Assembly: GCA_023515725.1 (NCBI GenBank) | Contig: JALDTO010000191.1 | Location: forward strand, 1-10,628 | Length of the DNA: 10,628 nucleotides | Source of the DNA: Amoeboaphelidium protococcarum X5 | Taxonomy: Eukaryota; Fungi; Aphelidiomycota | Direction of reading: 5' to 3' | Shown here: piece after piece, positions 1-10,628 of the stretch | How the letters are laid out: every line of letters starts with the position of its first letter | Position numbering within the stretch: position 1 is the first letter of the stretch | Notes under the pieces: model-generated | What the model saw: only the letters and a program-made list of their open reading frames with translations | Database searches by the model: none | Told to the model about the DNA's origin: nothing | Translations under genes and position numbers: made by a program

Positions 1-317
1 TGGCATTGAGTGGATGGTACCTCACCGGTGCTGATGGTATCCTGTAACAGTCGGACACTGAGGCGTACCTCTGGGCCAGGAAGAGTGCGGAGAAAGGATT
101 CGCCAAGGCTGAGTATGCCGTCGGCTATTACAGTGAAGTCGGAATTGGTGTACCTAGTAACACGGAAGAGGCTGTGAGATGGTACACAAAGTCTGCATCA
201 CAGGGCAATGTCCGCGCACAGGAGAGAGTGGCTGAGATAAAGAGGCATAACAGATTACAGGCCAGAATGAAGAATCAACAAGTACGTGCAGAGAATGCAG
301 ATTGTTCCATAATGTGA
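1..317 (+). CDS. CHS4: Sel1-repeat chitin synthase activator (Chs4/Skt5-like), 3' part; 5' end outside window
   Basis: Frame starting at nt 3 with TAA(45-47)=Q: ALSGWYLTGADGILQQSDTEAYLWARKSAEKGFAKAEYAVGYYSEVGIGVPSNTEEAVRWYTKSASQGNVRAQER...ENADCSIM-TGA(315-317). It has Sel1-like repeats, the LSGWYLTG...LQQSDTEAYLWARK motif typical of fungal Chs4/Skt5, and a C-terminal CaaX box (CSIM; yeast Chs4 ends CVIM). Missing from the supplied ORF track. Confidence 0.88.
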
Positions 318-517
318 TGATGATTGTTGCTACTCTTGTTGTTGATTTAATGCTGAATTATGAGAGTCTTATCCATTATTCGAAAGTGGAGGATCTGGAG
401 CGTTTTTGATTAAAAGTTCAGAGCACGCATGAAGTAAATATAGATCATTTTAATTAATTAAATACATCTTGAGACTATTGATTATATTTACAAATGACAT
501 ACAGAGAGTATAGCTAT

Positions 518-1027
518 TCATTTACCTTTAGTAGAACTTTAAGCCTTGGCCTTTTTCTTTTTACTAACACCATTCTCCAAATCTTGAACATTTTATAAAG
601 ATTTCTAGTACGTGGCAGATGATGTAGAGAATATGCGATCATTGTCCAGATTCTACTAGTATTATTATTGTTATTATTGTGATGACGACGAAGATAATTG
701 GGTGTGAGACTGAGAGTTCATATAACCCATGGATCCCATCATGATACCGCTCTATCTTGCCGTGCTACTCGACCCAGTGGCCAGGAATCCATCATATCCC
801 CGCGCCAAATCTCCATTACTACTAAGACCATTCTCCAAATACTTGCCTTCAAAAGCATAAATCTGCGATTCGATATACGCCATCTTTTTATCATTGTCTC
901 TCTTCCTCTGCTACTGTTCATACAGAATATCATCCAATTCCAATAGCTTTTACAGTGTCGGATTCCCTTTAGATTAATTAATCTTGATCAAAATTTAATC
1001 AGCCGCTAGTTGTTCACTTTACACCAT
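518..1027 (-). CDS. EAF6: NuA4 histone acetyltransferase subunit Eaf6/MEAF6, 169 aa, intronless
   Basis: ATG at 1027 to TGA at 518-520, open only with TAR=Gln (15 of 24 Gln codons are TAR). Family motifs IESQIYAFEGKYLE, GDLARGYDGFL and DRIFSTSSAT match Eaf6 (QIYAFEGSYLE..GNIIRGWD..ERLFS.SS.T). Lys-rich C-terminus. Confidence 0.88.
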
Positions 1028-1259
1028 TTATAATTAATATATTGTGTCTATTCTACTGCTAATGATAAAAATAATTTTATATTGGAAAATGTTAATGGGA
1101 ATGAACCTGTAAAGAAATACAAAAGAGACTCCTGTCAGTCAGTCAGTCAGTTGATCAATATTCCCTCTCTTCTTCTTTCATGCGAAAGTAACAGTAACAA
1201 AAATAGATATTATTATTAGTCCTCGTCAACTACCTTGATAATATATTATTTACTGCAAT
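1028..1259. promoter_or_regulatory. Putative bidirectional promoter region EAF6/DID2 (232 bp between ATGs)
   Basis: Head-to-head start codons around an AT-rich region with a pyrimidine tract and the GTCA repeat. Inferred from position only. Confidence 0.55.
1134..1151. repeat. (GTCA)4 tetranucleotide microsatellite in the EAF6/DID2 divergent intergenic region
   Basis: gtcagtcagtcagtcagt read directly from the sequence. Confidence 0.85.
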
Positions 1260-1925
1260 ATGAGTGGAATGGAAAGTAAGTTTTATAATCAAATTGTAGC
1301 GATTCATCAATTGTGGGATATGTGATGTGTAGAATCTTTGTTCAATCTCAAGTTCACTGCCAAGAGTCTGTAGAAGCAGAGTAAGAAGTGTCAGAAGGAG
1401 GAGGCTTAGGAGAAATTAAAGTTGAAGAAGGCCATTCAATAGGGCAATGTGGAAGGTGCCAAGATTTATGCTCAGAATGCCATTAGAAAGAAGAATGAGG
1501 CTCTGAATCTACTACGATTGTCCAGTAAGATTGATGCAGTCGCCTCCCGCGTGCAGACGGCTGTGACTATGCGCAAGGTGACCACCTCAATGGCCGGAGT
1601 GGTTAAAGGCATGGACTCTGCAATGTCTTCAATGAATTTGGAAAAGATATCGGCGGTGATGGATAAGTTCGAGTAGTAGTTTGAGGATATGGATGTTCAG
1701 TCATCATATATGGAGAATGCGATGGGTAATACAACCACAGTGACTACCCCGCAGGATTAGGTGGAGAGTCTGATGCAGGCGGTTGCAGATGAACATGGCT
1801 TGGAATTGAATATGGAGTTGGGCGTTGTTCCCTCATCATCTAGCGCTATACAGACGGCCAACAGTTCAGCTAATACTGAGCATGATGAGTTGAATGAGCG
1901 ACTTGCCAAGTTACGCGATGCTTGA
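1260..1925 (+). CDS. DID2: ESCRT-III-associated Did2/Vps46/CHMP1; exons 1260-1275 and 1333-1925
   Basis: Spliced product [85 protein letters not shown]...MDKFEQQFEDMDVQ...[16 protein letters not shown](1923-1925). Clear CHMP1 sequence with a C-terminal MIM1-like motif. In-frame TAG at 1371, 1407, 1440, 1674, 1677 and 1758. Confidence 0.96.
1276..1332 (+). other. Spliceosomal intron (57 nt) in DID2
   Basis: GTAAGT...TGTGTAG. Removal gives the conserved CHMP1 N-terminus MEKSLFNLKF. Confidence 0.9.
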
Positions 1926-2085
1926 ATTGTTTATTATAAAAATTTAGAAGGAGGATTGACTGGCTTAAACTGGTGACTTACTACTATTGATAATTGTAGA
2001 AATATATGCATTTGTTCATATTATTCACATCGATAATCGTATTACTTGAACCAAATACAATCAGGTAATAATCTTAAGTTTATTG

Positions 2086-4947
2086 TCACAACAAAGTACC
2101 ATCTTCTGCACCATCGATTTTAGATGTCAACTGAATCAACTTGATCCACTGCTCCAAGATGGATTAATCAGAGTGAGTGAGATAGAATATTCTGTCACCA
2201 TCACATAGTCTGAGATGACACGCAGTTTTATCGTTGATATCCATCACTAAGAATGGAGCGACAGTAGAGCCAGACAGACCAACACAGTCCATAGACTATT
2301 TGCCTTACAATCGGACCAATTCAGCTGTGGTCGCGGCAGACCTCTTCATTTAATCCTTATCGTCAGATCCATTATTATCACTAAAGATTAATGAATTTGA
2401 CTGGTGCAGCTAATGGTTATTAACCGGAAGGTGGGAAAAGATATTGAGCCACGACTGAGACTGCTTGACAGTGGTTGGAGATGCCGCAGAGGCAATAGAC
2501 GGTAAAAAGGTTAGCACACGTACCACTTCCAAATGACCAGTACCTTGATCTTCTGGATACAGAGATGGATCTTGGTCGCAATCAGCACCAGAGTCAGATC
2601 CATCAAACTTGCACATGAGCATAATATCACTGAACATTATCAGGAGATAGTACTTGTTTACGGGAGTACATTTGATACTTTACTGAAGCGATTTACCGGC
2701 CCCATTGGATCTCAGATAAACTTCATATCTACAATAGAACACCTGGCCAGCGTTGAGAAGTTTTCTAAACGGCTACACCAGCGGTGATGAGAGTGACCCT
2801 TTTATTCTGTTCTATATAGCCAGTATCTTTTCGTTATTATCAGCCTCTCGCTTCTTCTCATTGATCTCAATGGCGCGTTATCTAATCTCGGCAAGAGCTT
2901 TATGCAAATCTTTATAGTCCGGATGAGATGAAGTAGTGTTTTTCAACAGATCTTCCAATAGAAGTTTATACCGCGGGACTCTCTACACAGGCATAATGAG
3001 ATAGAAGGACAGATTGGGTTGGGTGTGACGAGGATCTTTCATTGCCGCCGTACAAATCTCTTTAAAGTATAACCTCTTCTTCTTACTGACACCTTGACTG
3101 TGCTTAACTGATTGTAAGCGAGTTAATTCATTACAGGCAAGATCATAATTATTCACGTAGACAGAATACATTTTCAAGAGAGCTGAATGCTGGAGGAATA
3201 CTTGACCTACATTTGGAACAGGGGATGAAGTGAGATCAGCGAGTAGAACATCTCTATGCATTTACAACAGGGATTCCCAATTACTGAACAAAACTTTCAA
3301 GTCTTCTCTACTCAGCGCATCTAATTGCTACTACTGTTACAACTGACTCTGCATGGGTTAAATGTAGAGATCATAGACAACCTGTAAAAATTCAACATAC
3401 TTTTACTCACTCTCCACTATTTCTTTGACGATATTGACACGCTACTTTCCCATTTTCTATCTCTTTATAGTATCATAATAAGTCGGAGGAGGTAGCATGA
3501 TGCTTTTGTAGTTCATCTTACCAGACTTGTTTTACATCACTGGCACAGTTTCTGCTAGAGACGCTTCATCATCCACTTGATAGTCTTACTGCAAGTATTC
3601 AGATCTGAGAGTCTGTACATCCTTAAAGTTTTATACCATCCATTAGACTCGATTGATATAAATAGTCTACGGCGAGGACTACTGACCATCAGGGGATAAC
3701 AATTACGACTAGCCAGCATCAGACTGAGGAGATCCGTGCTCATTACCACTTCCAATGAAACTACTAGACAACATAGATAATGGTCTAGCTTCAGGAACAA
3801 ATAACGATTAGTGTCTGGCATTCACCACAGGAATTGTAGACTATCTTTTAGAGGATACAGGCAGTCTAATAGTGGATTCTATAGCACTTCTTCGCTTAAT
3901 CTTTAATGGCCTCGCCAGATTAAATACATTCATCTGCTATCCAAAATCAGGTAACAACTGCAGAGACGATTAAGCTTTGGTGGGAGATGTAGGTTGAGAT
4001 TGAGACGAACTGAGATAATTTACAGAAGCTCTCGATGATAAGAGTTGAGGCTAATAATCCAAAATGGATAGAATCCCACTCAGTTGAGAGTCCCAGCGGT
4101 TCTTGGCACAGAAGAACCATAAAAGCCTATTAAATCGACCCAGACATGGAGGTAGAGTTTTCAACTTGTTATGAGATATATCCAAGAATACCAAATTAGA
4201 TAGATTAGATAATGCCTGAGGTAGCTCGAACAATAGATTATTACTAACATCTAAAAGATCCAGATCAGATAGACTTCCAATACCAACAGGCAAGGTATTC
4301 AACTTATTATGCGACAAGTGAAGCCGCCTCAGGTTGCGTAATAATCCAACACCATCAGGTAAGACGGCGACGTGGTTATGTGATAAATCCAATACCGTCA
4401 GAGAAGATGATAATTGATGATAGAAATTACGATCCCGTGGCAGAGCAGATATATTACAAAACTTGGCCTCAAGTTAACGCACTTCAACAGCAGCAGACAG
4501 ATCTATGCCGTGAAGACATTCAGGGCCTGCATCTTTAAAGCTCAACAATCCATCAGAATCAGCAATATTGTCAGCACTACCACCCCGTTGTTAAGACGCT
4601 ATTGAACTGCTTGAGCTTTACAAACTATCTTGAGATTACAGTGGACTTTTCGTATCTATTTTAGATCTAGACATTTAATCATTTGAAGCAGCTACTAGCT
4701 CTTCTTTGGCAGCATTGACACCTTCAACTGATGGTGCTTATGGTAATTTTTTAGAAGGAGGTCCATTTTTCAAAGTAGATCTTTTGTCAGCGAACTAATC
4801 TATTTTAGTTGCATTACCACTACTGTTTAGGGTCTATTTCAACACCAAACTACGCGAGATTATACCAACAGTGTGAGTGAGAAGATAAACCAATACCAAG
4901 ACGGAAACAGACTTGATCAAGAACCACAAATTCTCCAACCTGTCCAT
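2086..4947 (-). CDS. 953-aa LRR + DH (RhoGEF) + split PH protein with hydrophobic N-terminal segment, intronless
   Basis: One frame from ATG 4947 to TGA 2086-2088 with no TGA, joining supplied ORFs 4051-4392, 2983-3261 and 2410-2637. LRRs (LxxLdLSxNxLxxLP) lie at ~4100-4480. The DH domain at ~2860-3444 has RVNIVKEIVESEQKYVEFL and FYLIMPVQRVPRYKLLLEDLLKNT..HPDY. PH-like elements are RKLLNAG, YLLIMFSDIMLMCK and IFYLTHSDQSILEQWIKLI. Confidence 0.88.
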
Positions 4948-5258
4948 AATAAATACACCTACTTATATAGTTGACAGTCCCTAAAGTGAATATTAAAACG
5001 TGATGCGTCACGACAAGGAGAAGGAAGAAGAATTCAAATCGCCCCCTCCGCGTTCCTTGTTCCTTTGTTGGAGTTGATCATTCTACTTACGCTTTTCTTT
5101 TCCTATTCTCCCTTTATTGCGAGTGAGTGAGTGAGTGAGTTAAAAAAACGACTCTCCTGAGCAATTTGAAACACAGAAAGTTGTCCACGGCATTTGTAAT
5201 TTCAATCACAATCAATCTGTAGTTTAGTCGCTTGTCAACAATTGAGGATTGAGATAAA
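4948..5258. promoter_or_regulatory. Putative bidirectional promoter region RhoGEF/NDUFAF8 (311 bp)
   Basis: Head-to-head start codons. Contains the near-palindrome CGTGAtgcgTCACG (4999-5012), purine and pyrimidine tracts and (GAGT)5. Confidence 0.55.
5121..5140. repeat. (GAGT)5 microsatellite in the RhoGEF/NDUFAF8 divergent intergenic region
   Basis: gagtgagtgagtgagtgagt followed by an A-tract. Confidence 0.9.
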
Positions 5259-5492
5259 ATGAAGACTGCAATTGAACGAATTGGAAAAGCTTTAGGATCT
5301 TGCTCAATGGAGGTAATTTGAATTTATCTTGATAATTGAAGACACAATATACGCGATGCAATGTTGAGTGTGTAGGCGATGACGTATGGAAAGTGTGTGG
5401 TGGCCAAGCTGGACTGCGTTGAGAAGGACGCGTGTGCAAAAGAGTTTCGCGCGTTCTAACAGTGCTGTACGAAGCATTTAAGGAAGCGGTGA
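5259..5492 (+). CDS. NDUFAF8: Twin CX9C mitochondrial protein, NDUFAF8-like complex I assembly factor, 56 aa; exons 5259-5312 and 5376-5492
   Basis: Spliced product MKTAIERIGKALGSCSMEAMTYGKCVVAKLDCVEKDACAKEFRAFQQCCTKHLRKR-TGA. Two CX9C motifs with the C..EA..YG.CV and KD.CAKEF..F..C pattern of NDUFAF8. TAA at 5457-5459 must be a sense codon to complete the second CX9C. Missing from the ORF track. Confidence 0.8.
5313..5375 (+). other. Spliceosomal intron (63 nt) in the NDUFAF8-like gene
   Basis: GTAATT...TGTGTAG. It contains an in-frame TGA, and removal restores exact CX9C spacing. Confidence 0.88.
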
Positions 5493-5639
5493 CATTATAC
5501 AAAATTGATTAAATGAGATATGATGAATATTGAACAATCTACGTATTTAAAGTGGCATTACACATTATTACTTTTCACTTACTTTTACAAATTATACACT
5601 GAATGTGATGATCGATAATAACCTTTTATAGCTAGCTGT

Positions 5640-7205
5640 TCATGCCTGATGGTAAGAGCCTTCGTCTGCAGACTTGAGTCGTTCCAGAAATGATTGAGGT
5701 CTCTGCGTTTTCTGCTAGTGAGATTACTACTCTTTAGCTTATTACAATCGAGCGCGCATTAATTCATCAAAATCCTTCTTTGATTTAATTCTAAGAGTTG
5801 AGCTAGGAGACACTTGTGTGGAAGATGATTGACTATGTTACGATTATTATTATTATTATCCATGATGACCGCCATCCAAAATCCCTCGTGTCGGAGTCTA
5901 TGATGAGATACCATTAGATGACTAAAAGTGGGAGAGGGATTTAACATATTCACTAGCGGCCTTGAATGAGATTAACGAGTACTATTGCTCCGGATCTAGA
6001 TCATTCAGTGCTTCATAATCGCCACTATTATTTACAGAGATTAAACGCGTCTCTTGAACGTATTTCAAAAGTGCGTCTATACAAACACCAGCACGGTAAA
6101 TGCAAAAGGACAGTATTGGTAGAACATCATCAGCAGCTACTATGGCTTCATTATCAGTGGACACTACTTGCGCGATCATATGTACAATTGACTACATGAC
6201 ATGCTTAATATGATGTGGGCCACAACTCTCTAACAATTTACTACTATTATTTCCAACTTATAGCTGTTTAAACAAGTCCATTACAGATAAAAGATCAGAT
6301 AATTCAATAGATGACGCGAAACCAAATTTGGTGCATATCAACTCTTCGTCTTGAATCAATTAAAATTCAGCATTTAAATTACTCAAAATGTCTGTCCAAT
6401 TATTATGCATTTATGCAATGACAGGCTCTTGACAATAGAGCAAAAACAAGTGAGCATGAAGCTGGCAATCTATAACGACACGCTCAAACACCACAAGTTA
6501 ATAAAGCATTTCACTGTCCAAGTTATTACTAAATGACTTGGCATCAGAATCAGATGTCGTTGTCATACTTATAAACTCATTCTAGTATTTAAGCAATAAT
6601 TTACGGAGATTAGCTATGTGATCAGCATAGTATCCAGGAACATGAAAGTAGGCAGCACAATGTTGAGTCAATTCTAATCGCATCCTCTCAATTAATGTCT
6701 GAATTGGAGGACAATCAAGTACCAGAAATTGTATCATCTAGTCATAGTCTTGGATATCATTAATCTATTTGATACATTTACGCGTCTATTATTTGCCATC
6801 TATGACTGTAGAGTCGGAATCCATCAGGAGACTTATTGAACCATGAATGTACAAAATTTTGAATCCAATCATCTATTGTGAGTAGTATAGTTGTTCATCC
6901 AGAATTTTGTATCGCTTATTACCATCATATATAACGTGCCCATCGCTGATAGAGACTTGATGCTACTGATTAAGGGAAGCGTACTGTCCTTTGATGAAAG
7001 AAGATGGCACCAGGATATAATCTTACAACCACTCGACGCGCTGATAATTTTTACTTCCACTCCGACTTTAACGGCGATCATTTCCAATAATCGATTGCAT
7101 ACCAGCCGGCCTGTCAGATGGCACAATAAATAAAGTACTCTTACTAGGCTAATGTACCTACTCCAACATCAAAATGAAATCATCCATCCACTACTAATCA
7201 CTCAT
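5640..7205 (-). CDS. VPS9-domain Rab5-family GEF, VARP/ANKRD27 (Vrl1)-like, 521 aa, no ankyrin repeats seen
   Basis: ATG 7205 (preceded by an A-run) to TGA 5640-5642, with no internal TGA. VPS9 motifs AADDVLPILSFCIYRA and YSLISFKAASEYV. The N-terminal region (FIVP..DYILVP..YASLN..KILDEQLYYS..FKILYI) resembles, from memory, the ANKRD27 N-terminal domain (VLVP..SYILIP..FQTLN..ILFEETFYN..FSILCI). Confidence 0.8.
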
Positions 7206-7378
7206 TTTTTTCTAAATTAATCAAAATTTACCCATATTATACGGGAAAAGAAAGTCTATTCTCTTGCTCCCCTTTCATTATTGACGCGCGTTGCGTTCAA
7301 TGTTCTTTTCTCTCTCTCTCTAAACTATAAATTACGTTAAATCAGATTATATTGGTATATTTTATCAGTTTACATATC
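7206..7378. promoter_or_regulatory. Putative bidirectional promoter region VPS9-GEF/IMA1 (173 bp)
   Basis: Head-to-head start codons. Contains a CG-rich TTGACGCGCGTTGCG element (7281-7295) and (TC)6. Confidence 0.55.
7309..7320. repeat. (TC)6 tract in the VPS9-GEF/IMA1 divergent intergenic region
   Basis: tctctctctctc read directly from the sequence. Confidence 0.8.
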
Positions 7379-9311
7379 ATGCAGATTGATCTTAGTCCTC
7401 TGGAAATTAAGTTTATCATACTTATAACAGCTTGTAAGGTTCAAAATATCATTTGGTTATTTATGCGATCGTATTATGGTTTGTATTTTTGTAGTTGCTC
7501 TTTGCTATGGGTGTGTTCGATATTTAGTCATTAGGTGGAGAAGGATTCATCCGTATTGTCATTATTGCTCATAAAGAGTATATGTGCCGAGTCTCAATGA
7601 TGTATAATAATCTCACGGCGCTGGTTATCATTAATTTAAATGTACCTAGTGTGGTTCATTGAACAAATATGATCGCCACGGCAATGTCATGGATGTGGAA
7701 GTGGATCACTCGTAAGAGTATAGTAGACCATAAAGTCCAAGCAGGCGGCGATAAAGTAATTTATCAGGTACTTTATATTCACCATCTAGTATATTTAACA
7801 AGTAATAAAGCGGTACTGGAGCATATAATAAAAGTCTTTAGCTTTGTGAGTCTTGTCAAGATAATTAGAGGCGGAAGGTGGACTTGCTGCGTAGATATGA
7901 CTGTCCCCAGGTGGGAAGTGAGGAGAAGTTTGCCGTCCAGGCTAGTCGGTATGAAGCGCACATTGAATCAATGTTTCCTCTGTGTGCTCAATGTGAATTG
8001 GTGGTTGAAAAAGTACTCAACAATTCTAAGCGCTTCGTTATGGCTGATGCGATGAATAGGATGCTCACTCGAAGTTCTAATTTGTTCTCTCTTTAGAAAT
8101 AGTCTCTAGATGATAAGCACAATTACATTGATGGATAGAGATCTTGGTCGTATTCTACGATTGATAGTATTGGAATAGCGTGCAAAGTTATTATACTTTT
8201 TATTGTGATCTCTGGTCGACTTGGCATGAATGATATTATAATTATCCCATAATCGCTAAAGTTAAATGTCATTGAATCTTGGTTCTTTAGAATGGTGTTG
8301 ATTGCTTCATAAATACTTACTCTCCGACTTCCGTTGGTCATGCGTCGTCGCTCAAATGGTTAAAAGATTCTATACATCACTTGCAAGGTTATTTAGTTTG
8401 GGATATATTCTAGTTTGCTCTTATATTATCATCAGTTAAGTGTATATACTGCTTGCTTTAGCATCCTCACTGTGATATTAGTTTATATATATGTACGTAG
8501 CATGATGGATTCGCCTAGCTCGTAGTCTTTGGTTTTAAAGTCTATTGGTAAGAATTTGAAGCATGAATCAACGATTATCAATAACTCTATAGAAACTGAG
8601 GAGTAGTAGATTGCTAATGATCGAGATGCTTAGAATTTACTTGGATCTCTATCCTTCCAAAAAGACAGTCTAGATGATGATGTAGATGTGGATACTCATA
8701 CGATTTAAAATCATCTAAAGACTAAGAATGCCTCTGTAAATGCAGTAGATGGAAGTATCCCTTATCATCCTTTTCATATCGATGGTCGACGAAGGTTTGC
8801 ATAGTAGTCCCCGTCCAGTTTATCACAGATGGCGTCACCAGGCTCTCAGACCGTAAATTCAGTACCCAAATCTTATAATACTGGTATTTCAGGACTGACA
8901 TTCAATATAAGTGCGCGACAGGCTAGCGAGACTCACCAACGTGGATTTGGATTCAAATCACAGTCTGAAAGCTCTGCGTTTCCATAACGTTCAGGATCTA
9001 TGTCTAATAGATTAAAAGGACTTGATATTCCATTGAGGGACGCTCGTTAGTCAGAGTTAAATCTGCGAGATCCAAAATTTAATATACGGAATATTAAAGG
9101 TGGTGATGATTTGGTTGATTCTACAGGACTTGAGAATATGCTGTCCAGTGTAAAGATTAATAATGGGCACGATTTGAATACAGCGGCAACTGACAGCGGA
9201 GGCGCGGTTATCTTTGCGTCCATAGTTAAAGCTATTATATTTGGCTCTGTGATAGCGATTGGATACTACACGTTATCCAATTCTATCGTTTAGTAAGAAG
9301 ATATTCTGTGA
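7379..9311 (+). CDS. IMA1: Ima1/TMEM201 (Samp1/NET5) inner nuclear membrane protein, ~623 aa; probable exons 7379-7433 and 7495-9311
   Basis: N-terminal hydrophobic segment, then four CxxC pairs (CHYC, CTQC, LCESCQDNQ, IESMFPLCAQC) as in the Ima1 N-terminal domain. Central hydrophobic segments at ~8170-8495, an LRDPKF...DSTGLENML motif and a C-terminal TM segment follow. The frame is TGA-free until 9309-9311. An unspliced alternative start exists at ATG 7476. Confidence 0.82.
7434..7494 (+). other. Probable spliceosomal intron (61 nt) in IMA1
   Basis: GTAAGG...TTTTTGTAG. Removal joins ATG 7379 (MQIDLSPLEIKFIILITA) in frame to FALCYGCVRYLVIRWRR, and the length matches the other two introns. 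Confidence 0.68.
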
Positions 9312-9413
9312 TGAAATACAATCATTAATCTCGTATTATGTAATCACCTATTTGTGCATCAAAGTTCTCGATTAGTTTAGCTGTGCAGCGTTATTTGACT
9401 TGGTTGCAAAGCA

Positions 9414-9713
9414 TCAGCTTGCAAGCCTTTTACAAAAATGAGACGCATGAAACAATGCAACTAATCTGAGCTCTTTGATCGTCTTTTAAATAGAATCGGG
9501 CATTCTAAACTTTAATGGCTAATGGTTTGAAGATAGAAAAGGCTAACGAACGCGTTATAGCATCTAATAGATATCAGAGGTCAATGAAGCTTCTTCACTT
9601 ATAAGCATGTAATAGCGTTATTAAACTTGACTGAATACTGTAAAAGTAGAAAGAACGAATAGTGAATATAAGTTGTAAGATGGCCATATCATGACGACAA
9701 AGAGACTGCCCAT
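9414..9713 (-). CDS. Hypothetical protein (99 aa from ATG 9713; frame stays open upstream to ~9880)
   Basis: TGA-free frame under TAR=Gln: MGSLFVVMIWPSYNLYSLFVLSTFTVFSQVQQRYYMLISEEASLTSDIYQMLQRVRQPFL...HFCKRLAS-TGA. No family recognised. With a single stop codon, ORFs of this length can arise by chance. Confidence 0.25.
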
Positions 9714-10012
9714 TGTGTTAGAAATAAGAGCGTTATTACACCGTAACCTTGTGATTGTCCAACTCAGACTGTCATCACAGCCTAATAGTTTCTAATCATG
9801 ACTCTTCAAGTCTCTACTTTAAGATTTTCGTTATGCAACAAGTACTTAGTATAAACGGCACCATGATACAAGCAAACTACATCATTGTCCAGCAGTTGAT
9901 ACTTTCAATCAGTTAAAATCAATTTCACCACCCAATTGTATTGCAATTACTCTTTACAGTGTGCTTCACTGCGATTGACGCGTGTAAAGTCGGGCGGCGA
10001 TCCGACAGCAGT

Positions 10013-10024
10013 AGAGAGAGAGAG
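10013..10024. repeat. (AG)6 tract downstream of HSP70
   Basis: agagagagagag read directly from the sequence. Confidence 0.8.
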
Positions 10025-10228
10025 TCGGCGAGTGAAGTTGTTTGTCAAGCAATGAGGAAGCAAAATAATAACGCGTATCATCACTATAGTGAATGAGAAT
10101 ACCATTGTATCAACTAAAAAGTTTAATGTAAAATTATTAACAAGAATCATGAGTAATTATTATTGTTATATTTATTCAGCCACTTTCATTTGCCATATTC
10201 AGTAAATTTAGTTTATTCAGCTAGCATA

Positions 10229-10628
10229 TCAATCAACTTCCTCAACAGATGGACCGGTAGTATCTGGTTGAGGTGCACCTGGAGCACCGCCTGGAGCAGC
10301 ACCTTGAGGCATTCCACCGGCCTGATACAACTTGGTCATGATTGGGTTGGCAGTACCTTCCAGCTCCTTCTGCTTACTCTCAAACTCCTCCTTGCTAGCC
10401 TCCAGGTTCTGATCCAACCAGCTAATTGTCTCAGTGATAGCCTTCTCCAATGTCTCCTTGTCAGCCTCATCAATCTTGCCCTTAAGGTTGTCATCGTTCA
10501 GAGTGTTGCGCAGATTGTAAGCATAAGACTCAAGTCCATTCTTGGCATGGAAACGTGCAGTAGCCTCCTCATCCTGCTTCTTGTACTTCTCAGCCTCACT
10601 TACCATTCTCTCAATGTCTTCCTGACTC
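10229..10628 (-). CDS. HSP70: Cytosolic Hsp70 (SSA/HSC70 type), 3' part; 5' end outside window
   Basis: [46 protein letters not shown], a GGMP/GGAP-rich linker and the terminal GPSVEEVD, followed by TGA (10229-10231). Confidence 0.97.

What the first reader, a model, noticed from the sequence alone, without database searches (positions are those of the whole stretch)
1..10628. Non-standard nuclear genetic code: TAA and TAG encode glutamine, TGA is the sole stop, in a fungus-like genome
Seen directly: seven conserved genes contain in-frame TAA/TAG with no frameshifts and no in-frame TGA, and all eight recognisable genes end in TGA. TAR falls at positions where Gln is expected: DH-domain PV[TAG]RVPRY (2983-2985, the conserved PVQR motif), CHMP1 KFE[TAG][TAG]FED (1674-1679), Chs4 IL[TAA]QSDTEAY (45-47), and a position inside the second CX9C of NDUFAF8 (5457). 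True C-termini (CaaX CSIM, EEVD, CHMP1 ERLAKLR) sit at or just before TGA. Established: TAR=Gln occurs in many ciliates, hexamitid diplomonads and some ulvophyte algae, and among opisthokonts in the aphelid Amoeboaphelidium protococcarum. Inference: Chs4, Ima1 and SSA-like Hsp70 point to a fungal relative, so the source is probably that aphelid or a close relative. If not, this is an independent reassignment. It implies tRNA-Gln(UUA/CUA) genes and a UGA-specific eRF1 elsewhere in the genome.
Basis: partly seen in the sequence, partly recalled or inferred. Interest (0 to 1): 0.93.

Follow-up and report, generated by a model that had tools for sequence, protein, structure and literature searches.

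The report
Known aphelid stop-to-glutamine genetic code
This DNA comes from the algal parasite Amoeboaphelidium protococcarum, which reads two of the usual stop signals (TAA, TAG) as glutamine; the reading is real but has been published since 2013.

Summary
Observation confirmed, not novel. Eight genes (2,760 codons) hold 124 in-frame TAA/TAG, no in-frame TGA, and all end in TGA. The window is collinear with, and 90% identical to, a scaffold of A. protococcarum assembly GCA_023515725.1. That scaffold is the second haplotype in the run that also holds the window's own letters (40/40 alleles). So the window is the other homeologous copy in the same isolate, strain X5 by accession range. Between the copies TAR and CAR swap at 15%, like synonymous Leu codons (18%) and unlike replacement changes (2.7%, p=1e-9). 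TAR faces Gln in homologues: the DH motif in 34/34, and an Hsp70 TAA of the homeolog in 61/62. A spliced RNA contig keeps TAG, so wholesale editing is excluded. A. occidentale uses the standard code at the matching locus. TAR=Gln in this species is published (Karpov 2013, cited in PMC5304391 and PMC6299283). This scan has already noted the same code on other pieces of this genome. tRNAs and eRF1 lie outside the window and were not tested.

The parts
3..317 (+). 3' end of a Sel1-repeat (Chs4/Skt5-like) gene, CaaX ending then TGA; 1 in-frame TAA (45-47)
   Evidence: Pfam Sel1 E 7e-13; homeolog gene of 527 aa with Sel1; codon counts
518..1027 (-). Eaf6 (NuA4 subunit) gene, 169 codons, 15 TAR, ends TGA
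   Evidence: Pfam NuA4 E 9e-11
1260..1275 (+). CHMP1/Did2 (Snf7 family) exon 1
   Evidence: RNA joint 1275 to 1333, GT..AG, only in run X5
1333..1925 (+). CHMP1/Did2 exon 2, 6 in-frame TAG (1371, 1407, 1440, 1674, 1677, 1758), ends TGA
   Evidence: Pfam Snf7; homologue columns; RNA contig 1333-1769 with 5 differences
2086..4947 (-). LRR + RhoGEF (DH) gene, 953 codons, 39 TAR, no intron, ends TGA; homeolog product is KAI3630408.1
   Evidence: Pfam LRR and RhoGEF; 93% identical to P0001 outside TAR sites
2983..2985 (-). TAG at the invariant Gln of the DH-domain motif
   Evidence: Gln in 34 of 34 non-redundant homologues
   Evidence: RNA joint over a 63-nt GT..AG intron in run X5; homeolog gene of 56 aa
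5376..5492 (+). twin-CX9C gene exon 2; TAA at 5457-5459, CAA in the homeolog; ends TGA
5640..7205 (-). VPS9-domain gene, about 521 codons, 32 TAR, ends TGA (start codon inferred)
   Evidence: Pfam VPS9 weak, E 0.005; homeolog gene of 513 aa with VPS9
7379..9311 (+). Ima1-like gene, predicted intron 7434-7494, 623 codons, 30 TAR, ends TGA
   Evidence: homeolog annotated with Ima1_N; ends mapped; counts; intron inferred from sequence and homeolog length, not seen in RNA here
10229..10628 (-). 3' end of cytosolic Hsp70, EEVD then TGA; 0 TAR among 7 Gln codons in the window part
   Evidence: Pfam HSP70; full homeolog copy has 5 TAR, at Gln columns where homologues cover them

Best explanation
The window is a gene-dense stretch of the nuclear genome of the aphelid Amoeboaphelidium protococcarum (strain X5 by accession range), one of two homeologous copies about 10% apart. 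The genome uses the ciliate-type nuclear code (NCBI table 6). SHOWN here: TAA and TAG are sense codons that evolve as synonyms of CAA/CAG, sit at conserved Gln positions and stay unedited in at least one spliced mRNA; TGA ends every gene and never occurs inside one. INFERRED from the ciliate and hexamitin precedents (PMC5304391): duplicated tRNA-Gln genes with anticodons mutated to CUA and UUA, charged by a GlnRS that accepts them, decode UAR, while an eRF1 with an altered N domain terminates only at UGA. The reassignment arose on the A. protococcarum branch, since A. occidentale and Paraphelidium (PMC6299283) use the standard code.
For: Identity: best hit of the DH piece is KAI3630408.1, A. 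protococcarum; same eight genes in the same order on JALDTO010000266.1; 90.1% identity over 10,460 aligned bases; that scaffold equals the second haplotype of run X1 (40/40 alleles; 55, 36 and 48 differences in three spans match exactly). Code: TAR<->CAR exchange 31/207 = 15%, synonymous Leu TTR<->CTR 18% (p=0.49), replacement first-position T<->C 2.7% (p=1e-9); TAA<->CAA 11, TAG<->CAG 17, TAA<->TAG 10. Homologue columns: summed log-odds for TAR best for Gln (+10.0; next -9.1), and the control codon sets recover their own amino acid. TAA at the Hsp70 nucleotide-binding motif of the homeolog faces Gln in 61/62. Against other aphelid-like loci TAA faces Gln in 3/10 and TAG in 7/15, versus 2.9% background (p=0.003, 2e-7). 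Genes are intact: all indels inside coding sequence are multiples of 3, differences by codon position 7.1/3.9/14.7%. 12/12 complete annotated genes on the homeolog end in TGA. Literature: PMC5304391, PMC6299283, PMC11687900.
Against: No peptide evidence. The six TAA columns of the window that had enough homologues are all variable and do not favour Gln by themselves; the TAA case rests on the homeolog exchange and on the homeolog's Hsp70. The tRNAs and eRF1 are not in the window or the fetched loci. NCBI's Gln at these sites is an annotation choice and is not counted as evidence. The strain name rests on an accession range in one paper.
Confidence: 0.97

Rival explanations
1. The source is another fungus-related lineage, so this is a new, independent TAR-to-Gln reassignment.
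For: The window is only 90% identical to the A. protococcarum scaffold fetched, and the exact scaffold holding the window was not returned by name.
Against: Run X1 holds the window with zero differences in five long contigs and also holds the fetched scaffold's letters as its second haplotype. The species is reported to have a duplicated genome with paired genes 93-98% alike (PMC10608142).
Confidence: 0.01
2. The genes are pseudogenes or a decaying homeolog with nonsense mutations under the standard code.
For: Duplicated genomes often lose one copy; C-to-T changes turn CAR into TAR.
Against: Both homeologs carry TAR, mostly at the same sites (99 of 120 aligned window TAR are TAR in the homeolog); no TGA, no frameshift, purifying selection pattern; spliced RNA exists.
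Confidence: 0.003
3. TAR is edited to CAR in the mRNA (U-to-C editing) and the code is standard.
For: It would also give Gln at these positions.
Against: The spliced RNA contig over 1333-1769 has 5 differences for 6 TAG codons, and one difference (1748) is not in a TAG, so at least 2 TAG stay unedited; another contig of that run has 6 differences for 11 TAR. Genes never end in TAR, which editing would not require.
Confidence: 0.005
4. TAR is sense but ambiguous: context-dependent (stop near 3' ends, as in Condylostoma or Blastocrithidia), or TAA and TAG differ in meaning or are partly read as another residue.
For: TAR is under-used in Hsp70 (5 of 24 Gln codons versus 124 of 219 in the other genes, p=0.001), which could mean less efficient decoding. 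TAA exchanges with TTA 4 times and with AAA and GAA 3 times each.
Against: 8/8 window genes and 12/12 homeolog genes end in TGA; TAR occurs within a few codons of gene ends without terminating (Ima1); TAA, TAG, CAA and CAG all interchange freely.
Confidence: 0.015

Closest known systems
TAR=Gln nuclear code of Amoeboaphelidium protococcarum (Karpov et al. 2013, Protist 164:195; cited in PMC5304391, PMC6299283, PMC11687900)
   Same: Same species, same reassignment of both TAA and TAG to Gln; the public annotation of the homeologous scaffold already reads through TAR as Gln.
   Different: Nothing in kind. The homeolog-based exchange-rate test and the Hsp70 under-use of TAR are my computations; I found no paper in the searchable library that reports them, but the genome paper (Mikhailov et al. 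2022) was not held.
NCBI translation table 6 (ciliate, dasycladacean and Hexamita nuclear code); also the oxymonad Streblomastix
   Same: UAA and UAG = Gln, UGA = only stop.
   Different: Independent origin in an opisthokont lineage; at least 13 such coordinated UAR changes were counted by 2017 (abstract of PMC5304391).
Codes with all three stops reassigned or split UAR (Condylostoma, Parduczia, Blastocrithidia, Iotanema UAG=Gln only)
   Same: UAG read as an amino acid.
   Different: Here both UAR are Gln, no gene ends in UAR and no in-frame UGA occurs.

Membership tests
Table 6 nuclear code (UAR=Gln) | TAG is a sense codon for Gln | tested here: met
   Gln best by log-odds over 13 columns; 34/34 at the DH motif; TAG<->CAG 17 exchanges
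Table 6 nuclear code (UAR=Gln) | TAA is a sense codon for Gln | tested here: met
   61/62 Gln at an Hsp70 column of the homeolog; TAA<->CAA 11 exchanges; the window's own TAA columns were uninformative
Table 6 nuclear code (UAR=Gln) | TGA is the only terminator and is not used as sense | tested here: met
   8/8 window and 12/12 homeolog genes end in TGA; 0 in-frame TGA; local sample, not genome-wide
Table 6 nuclear code (UAR=Gln) | UAR present in mature mRNA (no editing) | tested here: met
   at least 2 TAG retained in a spliced contig of run X5; assembled contigs of another strain, not raw reads
Table 6 nuclear code (UAR=Gln) | tRNA-Gln genes with CUA and UUA anticodons | not testable with these tools
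   no tRNA in the window or in L070-L072; only unchecked scan notes on other pieces
Table 6 nuclear code (UAR=Gln) | eRF1 restricted to UGA | not testable with these tools
   eRF1 is not in any fetched locus and I had no tool-given eRF1 sequence to search with; only unchecked scan notes
Table 6 nuclear code (UAR=Gln) | Gln incorporated in the protein | not testable with these tools
   needs proteomics
Amoeboaphelidium protococcarum | Collinear, near-identical sequence in a named assembly and in the same isolate's run | tested here: met
Context-dependent stop codes (tables 27, 28, 31) | UAR or UGA used both as sense and as terminator | tested here: not met
   no gene ends in TAR, no internal TGA

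The most novel reading that the evidence does not exclude
The code itself is known, but the new Gln codons may still be second-class: TAR is depleted in the highly expressed Hsp70 (21% of Gln codons versus 57% elsewhere), while it exchanges with CAR at a near-synonymous rate in other genes. With two homeologous genomes and a standard-code congener, this species could serve to measure selection on reassigned codons and to trace the tRNA and eRF1 changes behind an opisthokont reassignment. This rests on one gene and could be plain GC3-linked codon bias.
Probability: 0.35. Interest if true: 0.25.

Novelty: already known. Interest (0 to 1): 0.07.

Why it matters
It matters practically: every window of this genome must be translated with table 6, or genes look broken. 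Scientifically the reassignment in this species has been in the literature since 2013 and the public annotation already applies it, so the finding is a correct rediscovery. It would have mattered much more had the source been a different fungal lineage; it is not.

Tried and rejected
Pseudogene decay, RNA editing, another amino acid, context-dependent stops and a new lineage were each tested and rejected (see rivals). NCBI's Gln at TAR sites in P0001 was not counted, being circular. The window's TAA columns against distant RhoGEFs were uninformative. The 155-codon table-6 frame at 9417-9881 (minus) is not a gene: the homeolog has many frame-breaking indels there and there is no Pfam hit. The LRR/RhoGEF split in metagenome locus L074 looks like an intron, not a second TAR-coding lineage (read by eye). 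L071 and L072 show no in-frame TAR in the intronless genes checked. No tRNA genes in the window or L070-L072. The genome paper could not be read. No run was on record as RNA; X5 was recognised as RNA only by its two spliced joints. Searches were input slips, corrected.

Full report
VERDICT. The window is from Amoeboaphelidium protococcarum, whose TAA/TAG = Gln code is published. Score low.

1. OBSERVATION. Under the standard code no frame exceeds 157 codons; with TAA/TAG read as sense, frames of 973, 809 and 526 codons appear. In 300 simulated windows the longest TGA-free frame averaged 278 codons, maximum 493. The eight gene models hold 65 TAA and 59 TAG in frame, no TGA, and each ends in TGA. 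Stop-free pieces, searched apart, match Sel1, NuA4 (Eaf6), Snf7, LRR, RhoGEF, VPS9 (weak) and HSP70 in Pfam. Ima1 is supported by the homeolog's annotation. The small gene is a twin-CX9C protein; the name NDUFAF8 is unverified.

2. SOURCE. The 92-residue DH piece finds one protein at 96% identity: KAI3630408.1, MIR68_011843, A. protococcarum. Its scaffold, JALDTO010000266.1 of GCA_023515725.1 (locus L070), carries the same eight genes in the same order and orientation and aligns end to end at 90.1%. Run X1 holds two haplotypes. One equals the window (five long contigs with zero differences). The other equals L070: 40 of 40 listed alleles, identical difference counts in three spans (55, 36, 48) and the same flanking letters after 5476. 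The window is therefore the other homeologous copy in the isolate behind that assembly. A paper assigns KAI363-series accessions to strain X5 (PMC10057920). Another reports genome-wide duplication in this species (PMC10608142) and 40.5% GC, in line with the window's 34-45% per 500 bases. The exact scaffold holding the window was not returned by name.

3. MEANING OF TAR. (a) Homeolog test, independent of any annotation: TAR and CAR exchange at 31/207 sites (15%), like the synonymous Leu pair TTR/CTR (18%, p=0.49) and unlike replacement T/C changes at first positions (2.7%, p=1e-9). When a TAR faces a non-TAR codon it is a Gln codon in 31 of 51 cases. TAA/CAA, TAG/CAG, TAA/TAG and CAA/CAG all swap 10-17 times. 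(b) Homologue columns, A. protococcarum excluded: over 19 TAR columns of CHMP1 and RhoGEF, Gln scores +10.0 and the next residue -9.1; control sets recover Gln, Lys, Glu, Tyr, Cys and Trp for their own codons. The DH-motif TAG faces Gln in 34/34 and the second CHMP1 TAG in 34/41; the first faces Gln in only 7/41. The window's six usable TAA columns are variable and uninformative. The TAA case is made by the homeolog's Hsp70, whose single TAA faces Gln in 61/62 homologues; three of its TAGs face Gln in 35/59, 61/113 and 60/114. The Chs4 TAA faces Glu in the one orthologue available. (c) Genes are alive: coding indels are all multiples of three, intergenic ones mostly are not, and divergence by codon position is 7.1/3.9/14.7%. 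(d) RNA: run X5 alone shows both GT..AG introns removed (1276-1332 and 5313-5375). Its CHMP1 contig covers six TAG with five differences, one of them outside any TAG, so at least two TAG survive in spliced RNA. These are contigs from another strain, so this excludes wholesale editing, not editing of some sites.

4. MECHANISM. Shown: TAR is sense, equivalent to Gln, and TGA is the only terminator in 8 window genes and 12 homeolog genes. Inferred from ciliates and hexamitins (PMC5304391): anticodon-mutated copies of tRNA-Gln (CUA, UUA), a GlnRS that charges them, and an eRF1 N domain that no longer reads UAR. None of these is in the window. Unchecked notes of this scan report such tRNAs and an altered eRF1 elsewhere in the genome; I treat them as leads only. 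The change is lineage-limited. At the partly syntenic A. occidentale locus 12 of 13 genes end in TAA/TAG and the three intronless genes checked have no in-frame TAR. Paraphelidium uses the standard code (PMC6299283).

5. COMPARISON AND NOVELTY. This is NCBI table 6 as described for this species by Karpov et al. 2013, cited in PMC5304391, PMC6299283 and PMC11687900. It is not one of the context-dependent codes. The scan's first-stage readers noted the same code on at least eight other windows of this genome. Already known. The only unexplored angle I can support is under-use of TAR in Hsp70 (5/24 versus 124/219, p=0.001), from one gene and confounded with GC3.

6. CONDUCT NOTES. One departure from the letter of the operators' note: inside scripts I concatenated the exons of the three spliced genes in memory to count codons, and BLASTed the joined models locally, with X at every TAR, against loci and proteins already fetched (the three spliced genes, CHMP1). 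The conclusions do not depend on it: all six CHMP1 TAG lie in exon 2, and one search gives the same picture from exon 2 alone. One human Hsp70 chain (P0143) appeared in the list; I excluded it from the comparison and did not pursue it. I took no contig for human, but did not check the origin of the metagenome loci L001-L069. No toxin, effector or animal virus gene was involved.

Noticed in passing
window 1250-7240, run X1: The two homeologous haplotypes have contig depths of about 2:1 (210 vs 87, 179 vs 79, 214 vs 101), the window's copy being the deeper. This hints at a 2+1 (triploid-like) hybrid make-up of this isolate; contig depth is a rough measure.
   Followed up: partly
window 3590-6308, runs X5, X7, X11: A junction from 6308 back to 3590/3591 stands in three other runs but not in X1, and depth in X7 and X11 is raised over much of that span. 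It fits a tandem duplication of about 2.7 kb in one haplotype of other strains, which would join the LRR half of the RhoGEF gene to the 3' part of the VPS9 gene. The reading frame of the join is unresolved.
   Followed up: no
window 10229-10628 and L070:2846-4771: Hsp70 under-uses TAR (5 of 24 Gln codons) compared with the other seven genes (124 of 219), p=0.001.
   Followed up: partly
window 5837-5870 (minus strand, VPS9 gene): A run of TAA codons (poly-Gln by TAA, from an AAT microsatellite) lies inside the coding sequence; the VPS9 homeolog has a 21-nt in-frame indel, not mapped to this run.
   Followed up: no
L071:10001-12906; L072:121-10090; L074:238-3004: Microsynteny of LRR-RhoGEF with CHMP1, KTI12, Sel1 and Eaf6 is partly kept in A. 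occidentale and in unnamed metagenome contigs, probably uncultured aphelids; those checked show no sign of the TAR code.
   Followed up: partly
runs X11, X13, X14: A. protococcarum-like sequence occurs in biofilm, sediment and freshwater metagenomes; X11 was laid and covers the whole stretch, mostly at 90-99% identity.
   Followed up: partly
window 9417-9881 (minus): A 155-codon table-6 open frame between Ima1 and Hsp70 is not conserved in the homeolog; probably not a gene.
   Followed up: yes
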